This document shows, one piece after another, positions 9,393 through 54,287 of a stretch of DNA of 64,000 nucleotides. The position numbers and the translations under genes were made by a program. Each line of letters begins with the position of its first letter. Positions within the stretch are counted from its first letter, which is position 1. The notes under the pieces are model-generated. The model searched no databases. It was given only the letters and a program-made list of their open reading frames with translations, and was not told the origin of the DNA. Source of the stretch: Anolis carolinensis. Lineage: Eukaryota. Where the stretch lies: NCBI RefSeq assembly GCF_035594765.1, contig NC_085845.1, forward strand, positions 17,168,024-17,232,023, written 5' to 3'.

Positions 9393-9586
9393 GGGCCAGA
9401 TTCCCTTTTGGTGGCCTTTTAATTGTCTGTCTTGATATTCTGGAAGGACCCTCAGGGCTCTTCCACACAGCTATATAACCCAGAATATCAAAGCAGAATA
9501 ACCCACAATATCTGCTTTGAACTGGATTATCTGTGTCCACACTGCCCTATATCCCAGTTCAATGTTTGGTGCTAAATTTGCAAATA

Positions 9587-9909
9587 CAGTAGAGTCTCAT
9601 TTATCCAACACTCGCTTATCCAACGTTCTGGATTATCCAACGCATTTTTGTAGTCAGTGTTTTCAATACATCGTGATATTTTGGCGCTAAATTCATAAAT
9701 ACAGTAATTACTACATAACATTACTGTGTATTGAACTACTTTTTCTGTCAAATTTGTTGTATAACATGATGTTTTGGTGCTTAATTTGTAAAATCATAAC
9801 CTAATTTGATGTTTAATAGGCTTTTCCTTAATCCCTCCTTATTATCCAACATATTCACTTATCCAACATTCTGCCGGCCCGTTTATGTTGGATAAGTGAG
9901 ACTCTACTG
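9587..9909. mobile_element. Tc1/mariner (pogo/Tigger-like) MITE
   Basis: TIRs CAGTAGAGTCTCA(C/T)TTATCCAACA; TA TSD; homologous to 16679-17001 and 42796-43138. Confidence 0.92.
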
Positions 9910-11290
9910 TATAGTTATTCCTACTAAGCATTACCATGTATTGAACTGCTTTTTCTGTTGACTTGTTGTAAAACATGGTGTTTTGGTGCTTAATTTGTAA
10001 AATCATAATGTAATTTGATGTTTAATAGGCATTTCCTTAATCCCTCCTTATTATCCAACATTTCCGCTTATCCAACGCTTTTATTTTTCAGTGATTGGTT
10101 TTGGGGGGGGGGGGGGCAAAAATCTGTTCACTTGAAAAATACCTAGGGCTGGCCCTGGTTAAGAGGCATCTCTATACACATAAAAACACAACTCTGGCAT
10201 TTTAGCCAAAAGTACAAATAGTCGAGGTCCATTTGCATGGCAGGTACTTTAACTGTAAAATGTTATAGTAGCATTTCAAATCCACATGTAATCTTACTGG
10301 TTCTGGAAAGAAGTAAAGAGCGAGTCTTTTCAGTTTTGTAATACCTTGTGTCATAAACTGATCATATATTTTATTATTGTGGCTAGAGATCTGCCCCAAA
10401 CAGAGGCATCTTCTCTCTGTTTACACCAACTTTCCACCCAATGGGAATAATGCAGACATATGTGGAGATAGGATATCACTTTTGACCAGATAAGTTTTAA
10501 CCAAACTTTTGTTTTCAACTAAACTGACAAGATTTGTTGTAATACTCAGCTTGATGAAGGTTATCCATCATACAAATGGAAATGAGATTTGGCTGACCTT
10601 TCCTTCAAGGCCACTATTAAACTAATCATATATGACTGTTATTCTGGCTATCTGCCATCAGTTTAATTGCACATTGTATGATCCAGCATGATTAAGGACT
10701 ATTGTACCAATGAAGTACACCTTTTCAGATTTCCTCTCTCTCGTTCAGCTAGATTCTCCCACATTTGCCTTAATTGATCTGATGTGATAGTTAGGTGGCT
10801 GAATGCCTGCATAAAATTTTCACCCCCTGAACTTGCTCTTCCATATTATAAACAGAAGCTATGTACTGGTTTCCAGTTTTCAACACATCCCTCACTATCG
10901 CTGGCAAGCTCTGCTCCTTTCAGAGCTATGTACAAATAGGTGCTTAAATATTTGTCTTATGTGTGGACAGAAGGATGGAGCATCATGCTACCAACTTTCT
11001 TGGTAGAAGGAGAGAATCTCTCACAGTTTCAAGAGTGTGGGGGAAGGAAGTTCTCCAACAGTTTTGTCATTACTAGTAATTAATTACAGTAATTTTCTTT
11101 GGTGTGTTTTGTGTGTTTCTAAATTGGTCACCAATTGGCCTACTTCACATTGCCCTAGACTTTGCGTTTTTCCAGGGCTTTTAGAGAAAATTCTGTAAAG
11201 TGGCTTTTTAGTAAGACAGAGGTGAAGAAATAAAAAAAGGAATCGCAAAAATATTTTCTCAGGAAAAAAACGGTTTTCTGAGCAATTTCA

Positions 11291-13650: not shown

Positions 13651-13971
13651 AGGTAAAGGTAAAGGTTTTCCCCTGACATTAAGTCTAGTAGTGTCTGGGG
13701 GTTGGTGCTCATCTCCATTTCTAAGGTGAAGAGCCGGTGTTGTCCGTAGACGTCTCCAAGGCCATGTGGCCGGCATGACTGCATGGAGCGCCATTACCTT
13801 CCCACCAAAGCAGTACCTATTGATCTACTCACAATTGCATGTTTTCAAACTGCTAGGTTAGCAGAAGTTGAGGCTAACAGGAGAAGCTCACTCCACTCCC
13901 TGGATTCAAACCACCAACCTTTTGGTCAGTAAGTTCAGCAGTTCAGCAGTTTAACCCACTGCCCCACCGGG
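13651..13971 (-). mobile_element. Sauria SINE (Bov-B partner), near full length
   Basis: (ACCTTT)n tail read as AGGTAAAGGTAAAGG on the + strand; diagnostic body shared by six copies in this window. Confidence 0.93.
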
Positions 13972-16154: not shown

Positions 16155-16678
16155 ACTACAGTGAAATTGGTTGATTTACCATGTACCAAATGCTGTTTTG
16201 TCCACTCGTATAGGAAGGAGGGTTAAAACTGCAAAAGTCATTTTCCACATGAAAGAGCCTCACACATCTTGAGACTTCTGTTTCCAGTTATACAGTGCCA
16301 GCCCAAATACATTTGTCAGTAATTTTCACTGCTTTATGCACACCAAGTGTTATTATTGTTTTAACCTGGAGCATTCAAATAAGTGGTAATGAGGAGAGAA
16401 GATCTGAATATAGACTTAACTCTTCTTTTCCTCATACCAATAATGAAATTCAAGACGACACATACAATGCAATAGCAGCTGCTGGCTCTCATGTGAGTGG
16501 GACAATGTATCCATTTTAAAGTAGCTATCTAAAACTTTGCCCCAAAACAAGTTGATCACAATAGATAGCTCTTTTAAAGTTCAGACTAAAATCCAGTGTG
16601 AGTTCACTGCTTTGTTTAGATAAGTGCCACCAACTATCCCTCCTACAGTGCAATCCTATCAAGGTCTACTTGGAAGTA

Positions 16679-17001
16679 CAGTAGAGTCTCACTTATCCAA
16701 CACTCGCTTATCCAACGTTCTGGATTATCCAACGCATTTTTGTAGTCAATGTTTTCAATATATTGTGATATTTTGGTGCTAAATTCGTAAATACAGTAAT
16801 TACAACATAACATTACTGCGTATTGAACTACTTTTTCTGTCAAATTTGTTGTCTAACATTATGTTTTGGTGCTGAATTTGTAAAATCATAACCTAATTTG
16901 ATATTTACTTGGCTTTTTCTTAATGCTTCCTTATTATCCAACATATTCGCTTATCCAACATTCTGCCGGCCCGTTTATGTTGGATAAGTGAGACTCTACT
17001 G
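16679..17001. mobile_element. Tc1/mariner (Tigger-like) MITE
   Basis: 24-bp TIRs CAGTAGAGTCTCACTTATCCAACA; TA TSD. Confidence 0.93.
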
Positions 17002-17809
17002 TATGTCCAACTGAGCTTAATAGGTTACTGTTTCTGAAATGACAGCATCTATTGAAATCATATTTCTGAAATTAGCATCAGGTTGATTTGATTAGTACTG
17101 AATAAGCAATACTAGCAGAATCAAAACTTTGTGTTTTTTGAGATGGGGTGGCAAACTGACACCACCAACTTACTCAAGTTGAGATAACTAGGCCCCCAGC
17201 TAAGTATGCTATTTTGGGCACTTCCCCCCACTTTTGTCAGTACAAATAAATAACAGCCCTGCTATCACCAAGATAGCCTCTTTCCTCAGAGAAACATGCA
17301 GTCCCACTTTCATGGAAAGGTAGTCCACCACAGCGTCATTATTTTGTCCTTGTTTTCTTTAAACAGATACATTAAGTATGGCTGATACAAATTTGTTTGA
17401 TGAATTCATCTGTGCAGTGGAGATGATGGGTCCAAAGCCAGGGATGATGAATCATCTCTTGGTTTCACTCCAAACTTTAAAGAAACTGCAAAATATTGAG
17501 GACCTATTTTGGAGATTGGCTTCAACACCTTGGGCAGCTCTTCTGAAGGTCAGACTAAAGCTGGGGGCACATTAATTGCCCTCATGCCATGGAGCCACCA
17601 TACTCCACTGCAGCTGTGGTCTATTGATAAGGATGTTAGATCAGAAGACTAAAGGCATATTTAGTATTTATCTTTTTCACAGTGGTGGCTACCAAGAAGC
17701 TTGAAGGCAGCCTCAAGAAGGGTGCAAAATCAGCAGGTGTATCTTGCTTTTCTTTCTCACCTTGCCTCTGATCCTGGAGTTAGTTTATAGCCACCCAGGC
17801 TATTTGCAG

Positions 17810-20786: not shown

Positions 20787-21120
20787 GCTGAGGCCACCCG
20801 CAGTGGCTCAGTGGATTAAACTGCTGAGCTGCAGGACTTGCTGACCAGAAGGTCAGCAGTTTGAATGTATGGGATGGGGTGAGCTCCCACTGTTAGCCCC
20901 AGCTTCTGCCAACCTAGCAGTTTGAAAACATGCAAATGTGAGTAGATCAATAGGTAACACTTTGGCAGGAAGTTAACTGTGTTACATGCAGTCATGCTGA
21001 CCACATGACCTAGGAGGCATCTACGGACAACACCGGCTCTTCAGCTTAGAAATGGAGATGAGCACCACCCCCCAGAGTCAGACTCGACTAGACTTAATGT
21101 CAAGGGGAAACCGTTACCTT
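20787..21120 (+). mobile_element. Sauria SINE, full length
   Basis: tRNA-like head and ACCTT tail; TSD TATAATAT(T/C)AGCC. Confidence 0.93.
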
Positions 21121-21309
21121 TATAATATCAGCCATAGAGACCACTCAGAATCCAATCCGCTGATGTCAAGCGAACTATGAAAAAATCCTTCCAAATCCAT
21201 AATATTGCAACACTTAAGTTCTTTCACTTTTTTCATCTTTGCTATGTTGCTTGAACAGCTGATGGTTACTGAGGAAGAAAGGCATCCCCATATGAGTTGC
21301 ATTTGCATG

Positions 21310-23339: not shown

Positions 23340-23671
23340 CATGGTAGGTAAAGGTTTTCCCTTGACATTAAGTCTAGTTGTGTCCGACTCTGGGGAGTGG
23401 TACTAATTTCCATTTCTAAGCTGAAGAACCGGCATTGTCCATAGACGCCACCAAGGCCATGTGGCTGACATGACTGCATTGAGTGCCATTACCTACCCAC
23501 CAGAGCTGTACCTATTGATCTACTCGCATTTGCATGTTTTCAAATTGCAAGGTTGGCAGAAGCTGGGGCTAACAGCGGGAGCCTACCCCACTCCCCGGAT
23601 TTGTACCACCAACCTTTCAGTCAGCAAGTTCAGCAGCTCAGCAGTTTAACCCGCTGTGCCACCAGGGGCTT
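23340..23671 (-). mobile_element. Sauria SINE
   Basis: Diagnostic body; TSD ATTTTTTAGGATAGG (23325-23339, 23672-23686). Confidence 0.93.
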
Positions 23672-24992
23672 ATTTTTTAGGATAGGAAAATCAAATTAAA
23701 GCTGGAAAAATGCTATGGAACCCCTGGAGCTTTAAACCACATGAGAGATTTCCATAACTAGAAAGAACTCTGGGACAAAATTCTAGTAGGAAGCAGTTCT
23801 ATGGACTCTGCCATTCACATATATGTACTCAAGTAACTGATTGTCAAAAATAGCTGCTGTAGTAGTAGTAGTATACTACTACTATAAAGGCAACAAATAA
23901 ATAAAACAAAACAAATATAGCCCCATCAATGTACATGATATTTTACAAATAAAACAATCAGAAATAGTAATCCTGATAAAGACATACAATGTGAAATATA
24001 TGTACACGAACACAATTACACATACACACACAAAGGGAGGGAAGGAATAAGAAACATATATAACTATATAACTATAAAACAAATTATTCAGATAACACAA
24101 TAAACACAGTACAATATAAGGCAAACTAATAAGGACATATCATCAAAATATACAAGAAGAAAATGTAACTCAGTTCTTATTCACCTTGGAAGGCAATGGA
24201 GTTCCTAAAGCTTTCTTATGTGCTGACCAACCTTGTTTTCTGCTAAACACATCCAGTGATTAAATTAGAGCATCCCCTTAATGGCTGAAAGTGAGCAATT
24301 TCTGTATCCCACATTTCGTTCTATGAAAGTTCAGACCTTTTATCATTTTTAAAGCAAAATGATTAAGTAGTAGTGGTTTAAGGATGTCGAATACCACTAA
24401 AATAAACAGCTGCTCCCAGTGCATCCTAGGCAATAAAGCCTATTAGCTCAACGACTCATGGTAAAGTGATTAGATGCACTTGAGTACTAATGGAATAACT
24501 GGGAAACAACAGACTGACAAGAGTTGTGCATTGACCCAAGCAGGTGGAAATTAAGATGAGGAGATGGCTTTTTTATTATTATTTTTTATAATAGTCTCCG
24601 GTCAACACTTGCTAGGAAGTATGTCATGCTACAGAACCATGGATGAGCTGGGAATTTGTGCTAGTGACTCTTTTGGTCCTGGAAGAGCTCTGTGAATCTC
24701 AAAAGACTGCATAAATTTGATATGATAAAAAGTATTCTCCACAGTGTTTGGGGCATAATCTGTAAAGATTGCTGAGTATACTCCAGGGCCAGGCTTCTTA
24801 TACTTTTCCCACTTGTGCCCCCTTTCTGTCTGAGAAATGTTTGCAGCACCGGGTATACAAATTTATAAAATAGATATAAAAATTTCCTGGTAGTATATCA
24901 GCATTTAAAAGGTATGCTAAACTCTGATGATTGCAGAATCTTGGTAGCGATTAAAATCACTCACAAGGAAATGTTGGAAATTTCTTTAGTGC

Positions 24993-26310: not shown

Positions 26311-26470
26311 NNNNNNNNNNNNNNNNNNNNNNNNNNNNNNNNNNNNNNNNNNNNNNNNNNNNNNNNNNNNNNNNNNNNNNNNNNNNNNNNNNNNNNNNNN
26401 NNNNNNNNNNNNNNNNNNNNNNNNNNNNNNNNNNNNNNNNNNNNNNNNNNNNNNNNNNNNNNNNNNNNNN
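26311..26470. other. Assembly gap (160 N)
   Basis: Run of N. Confidence 1.
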
Positions 26471-34032: not shown

Positions 34033-34634
34033 CTAGCTGTTCCCGGCCACGCGTTGCTATGGCGAAGTATGGTGGTATGGGAAATAAAGTATTGAGGAAT
34101 TGGTGGTAGTTAAGGTAAAGGGTAAAGGTTTTCCCCTGACATTAAGTCCAGTCGTGTCTGACTCTGGGGGTTGGTGCTCATCTCCATTTCTAAGCCGAAG
34201 AGCCGGCGTTGTCCGTAGACTCCTCCAAGGTCATGTGGCCGGCATGACTGCATGGAGCACTGTTACCTTCCCGCCAGAGCAGTACTTATTCATCTACTCT
34301 CATTTGCATGTTTTCGAACTTCTGGGTTGGCAGAAGCTGGGGCTTTAGATAATCTGTGGAAGAGGCCTAAGTGAAGCCTAACTCTGCCTGTCCCCTGGGC
34401 TGAGTCAGTTGCTAGGAGACCAAGTGGGCAGAGCTTAGACTTCTAACTGGCAGCAATTGGATAAAAACAATTATTCCTCTCCCTCTAGTTAGGACTTTAT
34501 TTTTCTTTTCTTTTTGTTGTATCAACCTAGAGCCGTGGATGATGGGTTGTGTTGTCAAATTTCGAGGTTGGGGGGCCTGTAGTTTTGTTGTTTTGTCCGC
34601 TACCCTGATGCCATCACTCTTTTATATATATAGA
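34033..34634 (-). mobile_element. Non-autonomous Helitron (rolling-circle transposon)
   Basis: Minus strand begins TCTATATATATAAAAG, ends with hairpin GCCATAGCAACGCGTGGC then ...CAGCTAG; inserted between A and T with no TSD. Confidence 0.88.
34111..34344 (-). mobile_element. 5'-truncated Sauria SINE inside the Helitron
   Basis: Tail and body match the other Sauria copies; lacks the tRNA head and a TSD. Confidence 0.9.
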
Positions 34635-37600: not shown

Positions 37601-38412
37601 TTGATGAACACAAGGAAAGGGTGATGTGAACACTTGACCAATCCAAATCAAACTCAATTCAGATGGCTCTGAAGCTGTGGTATATTCTGGAGTTTCAGTC
37701 AAATTCTAGAGTTTCCCTGAAGTTGATTTAACACAGGGTGACCTACAATACTCACAGGAAGTACAGGAATGTCATGAGGACAGCCAAGAGCCAATTCAGC
37801 GTAAGTGCAGGTTTTCATATAAGAATACCCTGCCAAGTTACAAACTTTTCTTTAACAAGTCAATTGGGAGACTTTTCTTGTTACAGGATATGGAAAAAAT
37901 ATGGTGGGACATACAGTTTTTTTCATTGCTGGTGCTAAAAAAGAAAAGATGCAAAAAGAATTTATTTAGCAGAGATACTTGTTTAGTGTGCAAAGAGTAA
38001 CTTTAGATGCAGAGATTGATTTGGTCACATGTATATATTTAATAATCCACTTATCTCTCAGGAGAGTTACAATGTGCATTAAAATGAAATCCAACTAATA
38101 CATGGAACATCACTAATTGTATCAACATCCTTTAAAATGATATTTGGAGTTTATAAACCTTCCCATTTAACACACATACACACACATATATAGTTGGATT
38201 ATACTGTATATTTTGCAAAAGCCTTTGAATAAGGGAAGAATTAGGCTTACCAATTGGGTATGTGCTCTTTCCAGTGTTGATTGTATAAGAACTAGGAAAA
38301 ATGTGCAGTGTTTATTAAGCTGTGATGACATACTTTGCTCTCTCTAGCTGAATCTACATGGAGCAGAAAATGCAGCTTAGCCCTGATTTCAAAACTCACT
38401 GGGCACAAAACA

Positions 38413-38738
38413 AGGAGCCCCCAGTGGCGCAGCATGTTAAAGTGCTGAGCTACTGAACTTGCAGACTGAAAGGTCACAGGTTTGAATGTGGGAAGCAGAG
38501 TGAGCACCTGCTGTTAGCCCCAGCTTCTGCCAACCTAGCAGTTTGAAAACATGCAAATGTGAGTAGATCAATAGGTACCAGTCCGGCAGGAAGGTAATGG
38601 CGCTTCATGCAGTCATGTTGGCCGCATGACCTTGGAGGAGTCTATGGACAATGCCGGCTCTTTGGCTTAGAAATGAGCACCAACCCCCAGAGTCGGACAC
38701 GACTGGACTTAATGTCAGGGGAAAACCTTTACCTTTAC
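38413..38738 (+). mobile_element. Sauria SINE, full length
   Basis: GGAGCCCCCAGTGGCGCAG head and ACCTTTACCTTTAC tail; TSD CTGGGCA(C/T)A(A/C)AACA. Confidence 0.93.
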
Positions 38739-39109
38739 CTGGGCATACAACACTTCCTTCTTCCTGAAGCAGCAGCACCAGATCTGTTTACATAATGAGG
38801 GTTCAAATATATATGAAAGATAGCTCATTTTAAACCTCTTTCCTGAACTTTTTAAAAATGTCTTGTCATTCATCTTTGGAGTTGATATAAGGAATTGGGG
38901 CTGTCTCCAGAGACATAAACACATTGGGAAATATATGTGTGCGTGTGTGTGTGTAAATGTAAGGGGACAAAAAAAAACTTGATTATGGGGTGCTACTGAT
39001 CATGTTCTGTGTGAAGATCCCATGGAAGTGTCATGGGCATGCTTTTGTTGAAGCAAATGTGTCTCAAATAGTGTTTCACAATGATGAGGTCACTTCAGAC
39101 TAAACTTTC

Positions 39110-40392: not shown

Positions 40393-40720
40393 GTAAAGGT
40401 AAAGGTTTCCCCTGGCGTTAAGTCCAGTTGTGTCCGACTCTGGGTTGGTGCTCATCTCCATTTCTAAGCCAAAGAGCCAGCATTGTCCATAGACACCTCC
40501 AAGGTCATGTGGCTGGCATGACTCCATGGAGCGCCATTACCTTCCCACCAGAGCGGTACCTATTGATCTACTCAAATTTGCATGTTTTTGAACTGCTAGG
40601 TTGGCAGAAGCTGAAGCTTACAGCGGGCGCTCACTCCGTTCCCCGGATTTGAACCTGGGGCCTTTCGGTTTGCAAGTTCAGCAGCTCAGCGCTTTAACAC
40701 ACTGTGCCACCGGAGGCTCC
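40393..40720 (-). mobile_element. Sauria SINE, full length
   Basis: Diagnostic body; TSD CACTCA(C/G)ATATA. Confidence 0.93.
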
Positions 40721-42389: not shown

Positions 42390-42795
42390 AAACAACCATA
42401 TGCATTTTCCCCATCATGATATGTTTTGAACTGTTAATAGTCTTTGAAAGTGGTGCCGTTTTTGAAGGCTTGTACTCATCTTGAATAAAATTGCTACAAT
42501 TACTCCTGTCTTCCTTTCAAAATAAATTTAGTTAAGAATTAAATCCCTATTTGAAGGCTGATTGGGTATAAAGGGTCATTTAAACCCTGTTTGCAAGTTA
42601 GTTACTGCTTCAGCTGACTGTCCCAAAGTGTCTCCCAATGGAAGTCTACCTTCAAGTAGATTACTATTAATCTACTTAAATCTTGTCCACACTAATTAAA
42701 ACAATTTTGTCTGGCATCACATATTCCCTGTTCATAGTGAGCCATGCATTTTCCCTAGCAAACTCACTTGGATGCAAGGAGGCTTGCATCAGATA

Positions 42796-43138
42796 CAGTA
42801 GAGTCTCGTTTATCCAAGCTCCGCTTATCCAACATTCTGTATTATCCAACGCAGTTTGCCTTTTAGTAGTCAATGTTTTTGTAGTCAATTTTTCAATAAA
42901 TTGCAAAATTTTGGTGCTAAATTCATAAATAGAGTAATTATTACATAACCTTATTGTGTACTGAACTGCTTTTTCTATCCATTTGTTGTAAAGCATGATG
43001 TTTTGGTGATTAATTTGTAAAATCATAACATAATTTGATGTTTAATAGGCTTTTCCTTAATCCTTCCTTATTATCCAACATTTTCACTTATCCAGTGTTC
43101 TGCCAGCCCGTTTATGTTGGATGAGTGAGACTTTACTG
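42796..43138. mobile_element. Tc1/mariner (Tigger-like) MITE
   Basis: TIRs CAGTAGAGTCTC / GAGACTTTACTG; TA TSD. Confidence 0.9.
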
Positions 43139-43348
43139 TATATGTATTTCCATGTTAAGTGTAAGGGGTTACCCACATCTCCAATCATTCACATTATTTT
43201 GGTCACACTGTCATGGCCACTCCCCCCCTTTTTCCCCAGTCATGCATACAGATATATGTATTTCCATGTTAAGTGTAAGAGGCCAATCACCTTTCTTGTT
43301 TCTTACATTTACATTCCCATAGGACAGGATCATCACTAACTCTTCATG

Positions 43349-44598
43349 CAGGGCCGGCCGGAGATATTTTTTAATGGGAAGCGGGGGTGCTGAAAAGCGC
43401 CCCCGCCACCCGCGCCCTGGCCCCGCCCAGCGTGCCCTGGCCCCGCCTCCCACGCTGCGTGGGAGGCGGGGCCAGGGCGATTAGTGAGGGGGGGCGGGGC
43501 CACAGTTGGCCCCGCCCCCGCCCAGCGTGGCCATTTTGCCCTTAGTAACAAACTAAGGGCAAAAATGGCTTATCTGGCTGTGCGCATGCGCACAGCCAGA
43601 TAAGCCATTTTTGCCCTTAGTTTGTTACTAAGGGCAAAATGGCCTAGGTGTGCTGTGCGCACGCGCACAGCACACCTAGGCCATTCGGGCCTGACTTCCT
43701 GGTCGCGGCCGGCGACCGCCCGGGCGATCGCCGGCCGCGACCAGGAAGTCAGGCCCGAATGGGCTATCTGCGCTGTGCCCGTGCGCACAGCGCAGATAGC
43801 CCATTCGGGCCTGACTTCCTGGTCGCGGCCGGCGATCGCCCGGGCGGTCGCCGGCCGCGACCAGGAAGTCAGGCCCGAATGCCCTAGCTGTGCTGTGCGC
43901 GTGCGCACAGCACAGCTAGGCCATTTTGCCCTTAGTAACAAACTAAGGGCAAAAATGGCTTCTCTGGCTGTGCGCATGCGCACAGCCAGAGAAGCCATTT
44001 TTGCCCTTAGTTTGTTACTAAGGGCAAAATGGCCTAGCTGTGCTGTGCGCACGCGCACAGCACAGCTAGGGCATTCGGGCCTGACTTCCTGGTCGCGGCC
44101 GGCGACCGCCCGGGCGATCGCCGGCCGCGACCAGGAAGTCAGGCCCGAATGGGCTATCTGCGCTGTGCGCACGGGCACAGCGCAGATAGCCCATTCGGGC
44201 CTGACTTCCTGGTCGCGGCCGGCGATCGCCCGGGCGGTCGCCGGCCGCGACCAGGAAGTCAGGCCCGAATGCCCTAGCTGTGCTGTGCGCGTGCGCACAG
44301 CACAGCTAGGCCATTTTGCCCTTAGTAACAAACTAAGGGCAAAAATGGCTTCTCTGGCATGCGCACAGCCAGAGAAGCCATTTTTGCCCTTAGTTTGTTA
44401 CTAAGGGCAAAATGGCCTAGCTGTGCTGTGCGCACGCGCACAGCACAGCTAGGGCATTCGGGCCTGACTTCCTGGTCGCGGCCGGCGACCGCCCGGGCGA
44501 TCGCCGGCCGCGACCAGGAAGTCAGGCCCGAATGGCGCCCCTAGCAGCCAGCGCCCGAGGCGGCCGCGTCCGCGGCCGCCTAGTAACAACCGGCCCTG
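43349..44598. mobile_element. GC/CpG-rich non-autonomous hAT element (Tip100/MER45-like termini) with a nested-palindrome interior
   Basis: TIRs CAGGGCCGG / CCGGCCCTG; perfect 8-bp TSD TCTTCATG (43341-43348, 44599-44606). Confidence 0.9.
43529..44534. repeat. Hierarchical inverted-repeat array, 390-bp period (about 2.6 units), containing a 590-bp perfect palindrome
   Basis: CCATTTTGCCCTTAG recurs at 43531, 43921 and 44311; 43682-43976 is the exact reverse complement of 43977-44271. Confidence 0.95.
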
Positions 44599-44815
44599 TC
44601 TTCATGCCAGCTCCACAGTAATGCTACTTCAGAGTCTGCTACACACCAAAAAAAAAAAATCCCTAAATTTTCCAGGCGTTTGCAAGGTAAAAAGGAAGGG
44701 CTTCCTTTGCATCTGATTAAAGCCCCTAGGTGTCAAAAATAATTGCTTTCCAAATAAAGCACCAAGAACATCACCTGTACAGATCACTACAGTTATGGGA
44801 TGAGAATGTTTTTGT

Positions 44816-45056
44816 GTTGTCGAAGGCTTTCATGGCTGGGATCACAGGGTTGTTGTATGTCTTTCGGGCTGTGTGGCCATGTTCCGGAAGCATTCTCTCC
44901 TGACGTTTCACCCACATCTATGGCAGGCATCCTCAGAGGTTGTGAGGTATCTATACCTCACAACCTCTGAGGATGCCTGCCATAGATGTGGGCGAAACGT
45001 CAGGAGAGAATGCTTCTGGAACATGGCCACACAGCCCGAAAGACATACAACAACCC
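44816..45056. mobile_element. Penelope-like insertion: inverted pLTR pair
   Basis: About 105-bp inverted arms centred near 44951 plus a ~30-bp extra tail on the left; TSD TGAGAATGTTTTTGT (44801-44815, 45057-45071). Confidence 0.9.
44964..45004 (+). ncRNA. Minimal type I hammerhead ribozyme motif of the Penelope pLTR
   Basis: CCT-CTGAGGA-T-GCCTGC(CATAGAT)GTGGGC-GAAAC-GTC-AGG: CUGANGA and GAAA cores, stem II, GUC cleavage triplet, stem I CCT/AGG. Confidence 0.75.
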
Positions 45057-45799
45057 TGAGAATGTTTTTGTCAGCTTAAATAAACCTTCATTTTCACCAT
45101 TGGGTGAAATCTCAGGCATTTTTGGAAATATCCCCCCTTCCCATCTTGTAGAATGTTGCTTTTTCCGAGAGCATATCCAGTTGAAACTCATTTAAATTGC
45201 TTCCATACAATGTCAAAGTAATGGTTATGTAATGTAGTTAGGGACATGATTTGGAACCTGGCATTTTCACTTGGAACAGCATCCTGAGACCATCTGGAGC
45301 TTGGCTTTCATTCCTCCACATTAGCTACTTTTCCTCCTCATTGGCTGCCCTGCCTTTCTCATCCCATTATGAAGTCCACTTGCACACAGAAAGACAGCTG
45401 TGAAGTTTGAAGAACAGTTAACGGGAAACATATTTCTGATTGCTGCTTTGTCTGGGTTTGCAGGTTGGCTAGCAACTGGCACTCCATATGGGAAGAATTG
45501 AAATGGTCTGAGTAGATTGAGAACTAATGGTAGTGTAAAATGAAATTTTCACACATGGTAATAATTCCCACCGTTTCCAAGGCTGGAAGGTGTTCTTTGT
45601 GTTGGAACACAAACTGAATCATTTGAGAGCTACAGAACTTTGTGCAATCTCTGTACATATTAGATGATCAATTTTGCCCTGGTGACAATTTGATAAATTT
45701 GGATGCCCATGCCAGCTTGTTTAATGTGCCCCCAGCTTTCCAGTTCTCACACTGAATCCAATCAGAACTTGGAAGTAATTTGTTACACATCACTACTTT

Positions 45800-54050: not shown

Positions 54051-54287
54051 TGTGTTGTCGAAGGCTTTCATGGCCAGGATCACAGGGTTGTTGTATGTCT
54101 TTCGGGCTGTGTGGCCATGTTCCAGAAGCATTCTCTCCTGACGTTTCGCCCACATCTATGGCAGGCATCCTCAGAGGTTGTCTTCACCTCACAACCTCTG
54201 AGGATGCCTGCCATAGATGTGGGCGAAACGTCAGGAGAGAATGCTTCTGGAACATGGCCACACAGCCCGAAAGACATACAACAACCC
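54051..54287. mobile_element. Penelope-like insertion: inverted pLTR pair (young, perfect arms)
   Basis: Perfect inverted arms of about 95 bp; TSD AAAAACTTTGGA (54039-54050, 54288-54299); hammerhead motif on both strands. Confidence 0.92.

What the first reader, a model, noticed from the sequence alone, without database searches (positions are those of the whole stretch)
43349..44598. Transposon-borne 'fractal' palindrome: hairpins within hairpins and a spacer-less 590-bp perfect inverted repeat
Seen: between hAT-type TIRs and a perfect 8-bp TSD, almost every base belongs to a self-complementary module. A = GCCATTTTGCCCTTAGT-aacaa-ACTAAGGGCAAAAATGGC; B, C and E are variants of GCTGTGCGC-NN-GCGCACAGC; D is an ~80-bp hairpin centred on CCCGGG. 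The order is A B A' C D E D' C' A B A' C D E' D' C' A B(7-bp deletion) A' C D. The array is at once a 390-bp tandem repeat and mirror-symmetric at several scales (35-80 bp hairpins, ABA' and DED' super-hairpins, and a whole-array palindrome). 43682-44271 is a perfect palindrome with no loop, centred at 43976/43977. The left subterminal region has further hairpins (22-bp arms at about 43434-43478), and the right has AGGCGGCCGCG-tc-CGCGGCCGCCT. Established: long spacer-less palindromes extrude cruciforms and are normally unstable. Inference: this may be a non-autonomous hAT family whose cargo grows by iterated fold-back synthesis. It is the best candidate here for an undescribed system.
Basis: partly seen in the sequence, partly recalled or inferred. 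Interest (0 to 1): 0.88.

Follow-up and report, generated by a model that had tools for sequence, protein, structure and literature searches.

The report
Mirror-copied hairpin array in lizard transposon
A young, non-coding 1.25-kb jumping element in an anole lizard is filled by one 195-letter piece copied back and forth in mirror image, which known DNA-copying errors can explain, so it is a striking variant of a known kind of transposon and not a new system.

Summary
43349-44598 has 9-bp inverted ends, a perfect 8-bp target duplication, the stated module order and a perfect, loop-less 590-bp palindrome. It is one copy of an abundant non-autonomous hAT-type family. The insertion appears absent at this site in four other animals. 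The 'fractal' is simpler than it looks: one 195-bp half-unit, made of short hairpins, written five times in alternating direction. One fold-back-and-return event on an 867-bp precursor reproduces the element with no substitution (plus a 7-bp deletion), while tandem duplication leaves four mismatches. A rare allele shared by copies 2-5 dates the growth to this lineage. This matches small inverted triplication, a known replication error (PMC13334657); nothing points to a dedicated machine. I could not test the interior with spanning reads, and a mis-join of opposite-strand reads would give the same extra 390 bp (about 20%). The scan has found this family before at about nine other loci of this genome. 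I found no paper describing the architecture; Repbase and Dfam could not be checked. Verdict: new variant of a known kind.

The parts
43341..43348 (+). left 8-bp target-site duplication
   Evidence: identical to 44599-44606
43349..43357 (+). left terminal inverted repeat, 9 bp perfect, begins with the hAT YARNG motif
   Evidence: motif from PMC3014272
43358..43528 (.). left subterminal region with five GC-box-like repeats and a 22-bp-arm hairpin at 43434-43478
43529..44535 (.). hairpin array: 11 X-type hairpins (A 40 bp, D 80 bp) alternating with 10 H-type hairpins (B, C, E, 36 bp); 390-bp higher-order period; only 210 distinct 12-mers in 1007 bp
43529..43586 (-). partial mirror copy (58 bp) of the half-unit, reflected at B1
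   Evidence: 0 differences from the start of U1
43587..43781 (+). half-unit U1 (195 bp), older alleles: differs from U2-U5 at four sites in its first 95 bp
43782..43976 (-). half-unit U2
43977..44171 (+). half-unit U3, exact mirror of U2
44172..44358 (-). half-unit U4 (187 bp)
44349..44377 (.). third B hairpin with a 7-bp deletion between two GC dinucleotides, which leaves a 9-nt spacer
44368..44535 (+). half-unit U5 (168 bp, ends after D)
43682..44271 (.). perfect 590-bp palindrome without loop; includes E1 (43764-43799) and its flipped copy E2 (44154-44189)
44536..44589 (.). right subterminal region with an 11-bp-arm hairpin at 44558-44581
   Evidence: most family copies have A at 44571, a shorter arm
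44590..44598 (-). right terminal inverted repeat
   Evidence: family contigs leave the stretch behind 44598 with other flanks
44599..44606 (+). right 8-bp target-site duplication
   Evidence: flank contigs of four runs start exactly at 44599

Best explanation
A recent, still polymorphic insertion of an abundant non-autonomous hAT-type transposon, moved by a transposase made elsewhere. Its interior began as a short repeat of two kinds of hairpin (X and H). It grows when a newly made strand, released during replication or during repair of the gap left by excision, folds back on one of its own hairpins, copies itself backwards, and returns to the template at another hairpin. One such event adds two half-units (390 bp). 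The same self-templating copies a change in one hairpin arm to the other. Shown: ends, target duplication, half-unit structure, alternating markers, fit of one fold-back event, compensated arm changes, family abundance. Strongly implied: empty site in other animals. Inferred: the single-stranded intermediate, the enzymes, and that gap repair after excision speeds it up. The hairpins and promoter-like motifs are most likely tolerated passengers.
For: Perfect 8-bp duplication and inverted ends. In four runs from four studies the contig over the right flank starts at 44599 and does not run into the element; in X3 and X5 at least 123 unlike letters lie on that side (table 8). Summed contig depth on the last terminal bin is 330 to 9,900 times the flank (not a copy number). 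A loops, C loops, D mismatches and E loops all alternate. From a hypothetical 867-bp precursor, one fold-back about B2 with return at D gives the element with 0 substitutions and the 7-bp deletion; a 390-bp tandem duplication leaves 4 mismatches; copying back past D1 leaves 3. G at 44454 is rare in the family (C in 98.6-100% of depth) but stands in U2-U5 and not U1, so those copies descend from one mutated unit and were not stitched from other loci. Among the H hairpins 6 of 22 pairs change on both sides, 97.6% of cells pair, 0 of 500 shuffles reach the covariation score. Other copies join the same modules in other orders (tables 5 and 7). Small inverted triplications have medians of 148/160/148 bp and arise at palindromic junctions by 3' flap fold-back (PMC13334657).
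Against: No read or contig spans the interior. The precursor is my construction, not an observed allele. Tandem duplication plus a flip of the E loop gives the same string in two steps. The six H rows are related copies, and B and E arms are mirror copies by construction, so the shuffle result overstates independence; the C hairpin (sites 62 and 89) is the cleanest case. The letters beyond 44599 in the four runs were not shown, so the single target site was not read directly. No partner transposase was found.
Confidence: 0.6

Rival explanations
1. The element and its hairpin modules are real, but the extra 390 bp and the 590-bp perfect palindrome are an assembly or cloning artefact: opposite-strand reads of an 860-867-bp copy (U U' U) were joined after B2.
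For: A mis-join of opposite-strand reads gives exactly the flipped E and perfect mirror seen. U2-U5 are identical apart from the E centre. Such structures are lost in E. coli plasmids (PMC13334657), so a clone-based assembly would be suspect; the assembly method is unknown to me. No piece spans the stretch.
Against: B3 differs from B2 by a 7-bp deletion, as distinct copies would. Runs of other animals hold up to 86% of the element's sampled 31-letter words. Earlier notes report arrays of similar or greater length at other loci (unchecked). Even the shorter form needs mirror copying at B and E.
Confidence: 0.2
2. The 390-bp unit was formed once by old inversions and then expanded by ordinary tandem duplication (slippage or unequal exchange); the E loop flipped separately by exchange between its arms.
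For: Period 390 at 97%; only 4 positions, all in the E centre, separate this from the fold-back model. Other copies show 75-bp direct jumps (joint 44431 to 44357).
Against: Needs two events where one suffices, and still needs mirror copying to make the unit and the compensated arm changes.
Confidence: 0.13
3. The element has its own rolling-hairpin or foldback replication route, as parvoviruses do, with B and E as turnaround hairpins, and the array is a replication concatemer caught between hAT ends.
For: Alternating-orientation concatemer with flip and flop forms of the E loop; turnarounds always at the same two hairpins.
Against: No coding capacity; no relative in viral or metagenome contigs beyond 20-27-bp chance matches; ends and 8-bp duplication are those of cut-and-paste insertion; a host error explains the pattern.
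Confidence: 0.04

Closest known systems
Orphan non-autonomous anole families hAT-N6, N7, N8_AC (PMC3014272)
   Same: Same genome by the scan's notes; young, about 1,000 or more copies, 8-bp target duplication; this site fits the N7/N8 pattern NNTNNANN; 10 and 9 of 12 terminal letters match the N7 repeat; no known autonomous partner.
   Different: Position 4 of the end is G, not A; 9-bp perfect repeat against 12; lengths there are 810, 288 and 329 bp; the hAT section of the paper describes no hairpin array.
Small inverted triplication (PMC13334657) and ODIRA-type inverted triplication (PMC4689423, PMC10766183)
   Same: Direct-inverted-direct copies of about 150-200 bp joined at palindromic junctions, made by fold-back and a second template switch.
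   Different: Those are rare single events with about 30-bp spacers and 6-bp junctions. Here the junctions are whole 36-bp hairpins with little or no spacer, the event has recurred, and the product travels inside a transposon.
Tandem-repeat-carrying MITEs: DTC84 of Donax, DINE-1, pearl, Xenopus MITE-borne repeats (PMC3879986)
   Same: Conserved ends act as a cassette for a variable internal array; palindromes in the unit are proposed hotspots of length change.
   Different: DTC84 repeats all face the same way and hold one 12-nt palindrome each; here the units alternate in direction and are 99% hairpin.
Pithovirus M1/M2 palindromic repeats (PMC10664404); enterobacterial BIME arrays and Drosophila Foldback elements (from memory, not tested)
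   Same: Arrays of two alternating palindromic modules.
   Different: Unrelated hosts; no hAT ends or 8-bp duplication around the array; no sequence comparison was made.

Membership tests
hAT superfamily, non-autonomous | 8-bp target-site duplication | tested here: met
   boundary at 44598/44599 in four runs
hAT superfamily, non-autonomous | short terminal inverted repeats (10-25 bp in PMC3942097) starting with YARNG | tested here: met
   motif met; 9 bp perfect, 10 of 12, at the short edge of the range
hAT superfamily, non-autonomous | no transposase gene | tested here: met
   the two long frames have no Pfam match and no homolog
hAT superfamily, non-autonomous | dispersed copies and recent mobility | tested here: met
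   high depth on the ends, other flanks behind 44598, site apparently empty in four runs
hAT superfamily, non-autonomous | an autonomous hAT with the same ends | not testable with these tools
   no lizard genome search; note search blank
hAT Tip group | transposase phylogeny | not testable with these tools
   no transposase; likeness of the ends to Tip100-type elements is from memory only; searches gave no consensus to test
hAT-N6/N7/N8_AC | 12-bp terminal repeat with A at position 4 | tested here: not met
   10 and 9 of 12 match
hAT-N6/N7/N8_AC | target pattern NNTNNANN (N7, N8) | tested here: met
   TCTTCATG fits; weak test, 1 in 16 by chance
hAT-N6/N7/N8_AC | internal sequence identity to the consensus | not testable with these tools
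   no supplement held
Small inverted triplication | direct-inverted-direct copies joined at reverse-complementary junctions | tested here: met
Small inverted triplication | an observed un-triplicated parent allele | not testable with these tools
   precursor is hypothetical; other animals lack the insertion
Rolling-hairpin replicon (parvovirus-like) | Rep/HUH nickase gene or related viral sequence | tested here: not met
Structured RNA family | Rfam match at gathering score | tested here: not met

The most novel reading that the evidence does not exclude
The hairpin array is selected at the level of the element: fold-back growth multiplies CpG-rich NRF1-, YY1- and ETS-like motifs or cruciform-forming DNA that keep copies unmethylated or open to transposase, so the family is a self-amplifying portable CpG island whose success depends on the array, and it keeps long perfect palindromes that vertebrate genomes normally lose.
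Probability: 0.12. Interest if true: 0.75.

Novelty: new variant of a known kind. Interest (0 to 1): 0.4.

Why it matters
If the interior is confirmed, a family with hundreds to thousands of copies gives a natural record of repeated small inverted triplications and arm-to-arm correction in a vertebrate germline. Rates, junction rules and the decay of long palindromes could be measured across copies, where they are now known from rare cancer and yeast mutant events. It also scatters CpG-rich (observed/expected 0.91 against 0.23), motif-rich and possibly fragile DNA through the lizard genome. It does not need new enzymes or a new class of element, and this locus is one of many.

Tried and rejected
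Coding role: the 260- and 253-aa frames across the array have no homolog among 1,785 candidates and no Pfam match; they are by-products of GC-rich palindromic DNA. RNA family: no Rfam hit in the window. Viral or microbial origin: the A-hairpin pattern gave 119 metagenome and 2 viral loci, but BLAST of the element against them found only 20-27-bp matches; I did not inspect those contigs further and took none for human. Second copy in the window: none. Pure tandem duplication: 4 mismatches. Host gene: seven other long frames have no Pfam match, so the gene context is unknown. Literature: searches for the terminal motif and for palindromic squamate transposons found no description; the library lacks many subscription papers. 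The N run at 26311-26470 and the frame crossing it were left alone.

Full report
Observation. The element runs from 43349 to 44598 between two copies of TCTTCATG, with 9-bp perfect inverted ends. It is 65% GC with CpG observed/expected 0.91, in a window of 40% GC and 0.23. The palindrome centred at 43976/43977 is perfect over 295-bp arms, and extends to 382 bp at 99%. The longest loop-less palindrome outside the element has 11-bp arms. Module order, the 390-bp period and both subterminal hairpins are as described. One half-unit folds as single-stranded DNA at -105.7 kcal/mol, z = -19 against shuffles.

Host and family. Earlier notes of the scan call this genome the green anole and list about nine other hairpin-packed hAT copies of 571-1,659 bp (unchecked, sequences not available). 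The window agrees with that host: its MITEs carry the TcMar-N7/N8_AC terminal repeat of PMC3014272. Twenty runs from nine studies of one organism hold 30-86% of the element's sampled words; the three rows from other organisms hold almost none. Laying four runs on 44346-44810 gave hundreds of contigs on the element and one or two on the flank; summed depth on the last terminal bin is 330 to 9,900 times the flank, which shows abundance but is not a copy number. In every run the flank contig starts at 44599, the first base of the target duplication, and does not continue into the element; in X3 and X5 at least 123 unlike letters lie on that side. This is what an empty site gives, though the letters were not displayed. 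The insertion is therefore young and probably polymorphic. None of these runs looks like the source animal.

Classification. The 8-bp duplication, YARNG ends and lack of coding capacity place it among non-autonomous hAT elements. The nearest described anole families are the orphans hAT-N6, N7 and N8_AC, but the end differs at position 4 and the lengths differ, so I do not file it under them. A tie to the Tip group rests on memory and is untested.

Anatomy. The array alternates 11 X-type hairpins (A or D, whose outer arms share 11 of 17 letters) with 10 H-type hairpins of 36 bp (B, C, E; the third B is 29 bp). It reduces to one 195-bp half-unit U written as a 58-bp mirror stub, then U, U', U, U', U, with turning points at the centres of B and E. 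A string with two mirror points 195 bp apart is automatically a 390-bp tandem repeat, and mirrored hairpins give hairpins within hairpins. The 1,007 bp hold only 210 distinct 12-mers.

History. U1 differs from U2-U5 at four sites. One is a B-arm change mirrored in both arms. Two are partner positions of the C hairpin swapped together, about 1% likely for independent hits. One is the junction letter at 44454, where the family has C in 98.6-100% of depth while U2-U5 have G. Copies 2-5 thus come from one mutated unit in this lineage and are not borrowed from other loci. All asymmetric markers alternate, including the E loop, which a tandem copy would repeat unchanged. From an 867-bp precursor (element minus 44153-44535), a strand that folds back about B2, copies E and up to all of D1 backwards, and returns at D2 yields the element with no substitution; only the 7-bp deletion in B3 remains. 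Tandem duplication leaves four mismatches. The deletion lies between two GC dinucleotides at a hairpin tip and opens a 9-nt spacer; it could be slippage, imprecise priming, or the central break that stabilises palindromes (own knowledge). Across B, C and E, 6 of 22 pairs change on both sides and 97.6% of cells stay paired; relatedness inflates this test. Contigs from other copies join the modules in other orders.

Mechanism. The pattern matches small inverted triplication: direct-inverted-direct copies with medians of 148/160/148 bp, made when a 3' flap folds back at a palindrome and later returns to its template (PMC13334657). ODIRA is the larger version. A unit made of hairpins offers many such junctions, and each event lengthens the palindromes, so growth can repeat. 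Repair of the gap left by excision would expose single strands of the interior more often than elsewhere; that step is inference from established knowledge of cut-and-paste elements. I put this at 0.6.

Rivals. An assembly mis-join of opposite-strand reads of the shorter form predicts the same flipped E and perfect mirror, and I could not exclude it (0.2). B2 differing from B3, and the word sharing in other animals, argue against it; even the short form would be a mirror-built array. Tandem duplication with a separate loop flip needs one more event (0.13). A dedicated rolling-hairpin route has no gene or relative to support it (0.04).

Function. The element holds 7 NRF1-like, 12 YY1-like, 10 ETS-like and 6 GC-box matches, against 0 to 0.3 per equal length elsewhere in the window. 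These counts come from copying a few sites, and consensus matches do not show activity. No holder run is on record as RNA. Passenger status is the default; selection on the array is the novel case (0.12).

Comparison and verdict. Transposons that carry variable arrays with palindromes are known (DTC84 and others, PMC3879986), as are arrays of alternating palindromic modules (PMC10664404). What I found described nowhere is a vertebrate hAT family whose interior is almost wholly hairpin and alternates in orientation, but Repbase and Dfam were not available. It is a new variant of a known kind, already seen by this scan at other loci. Interest 0.40.

Limits kept. The N run at 26311-26470 was not filled or looked up. 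The full array was not sent to read laying because of its stated rule on long repeats.

Noticed in passing
window 44842-45061: A second near-perfect palindrome 240 bp to the right: 109-bp arms, 97% complementary, 2-nt spacer, made of a dispersed repeat; a similar one lies at about 54080-54287. From memory it resembles tail-to-tail Penelope ends of anoles.
   Followed up: no
window 42790-43148, 9578-9919, 16670-17011: MITE copies with the TcMar-N7/N8_AC terminal repeat of PMC3014272; one ends about 200 bp left of the element.
   Followed up: partly
window 44571 and 44577-44598: This copy has C at 44571 where 92-97% of family depth has A; the change lengthens the right hairpin arm by one pair. 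Loose ends behind 44577 show another subfamily with a different subterminal sequence but the same terminal repeat.
   Followed up: partly
window 44642-44762: The right flank differs from the four runs at several sites (2-3-bp gap at 44648; substitutions at 44677, 44727, 44762), so the insertion sits on a distinct haplotype or population.
   Followed up: no
window 44400-44461: Loose ends and joints show hybrid modules in other copies, with a D-like centre inside A-like arms, which supports a common origin of A and D.
   Followed up: partly
window 43139-43168 and 43253-43282: A 30-bp direct repeat (97%) in the left flank, 114 bp apart.
   Followed up: no
window 13655-13971, 20797-21121, 23344-23678, 34118-34440, 38408-38740, 40394-40720: Six copies of an approximately 320-bp dispersed repeat at 65-87% identity, in both orientations; from memory Sauria SINE.
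   Followed up: no
   Followed up: no
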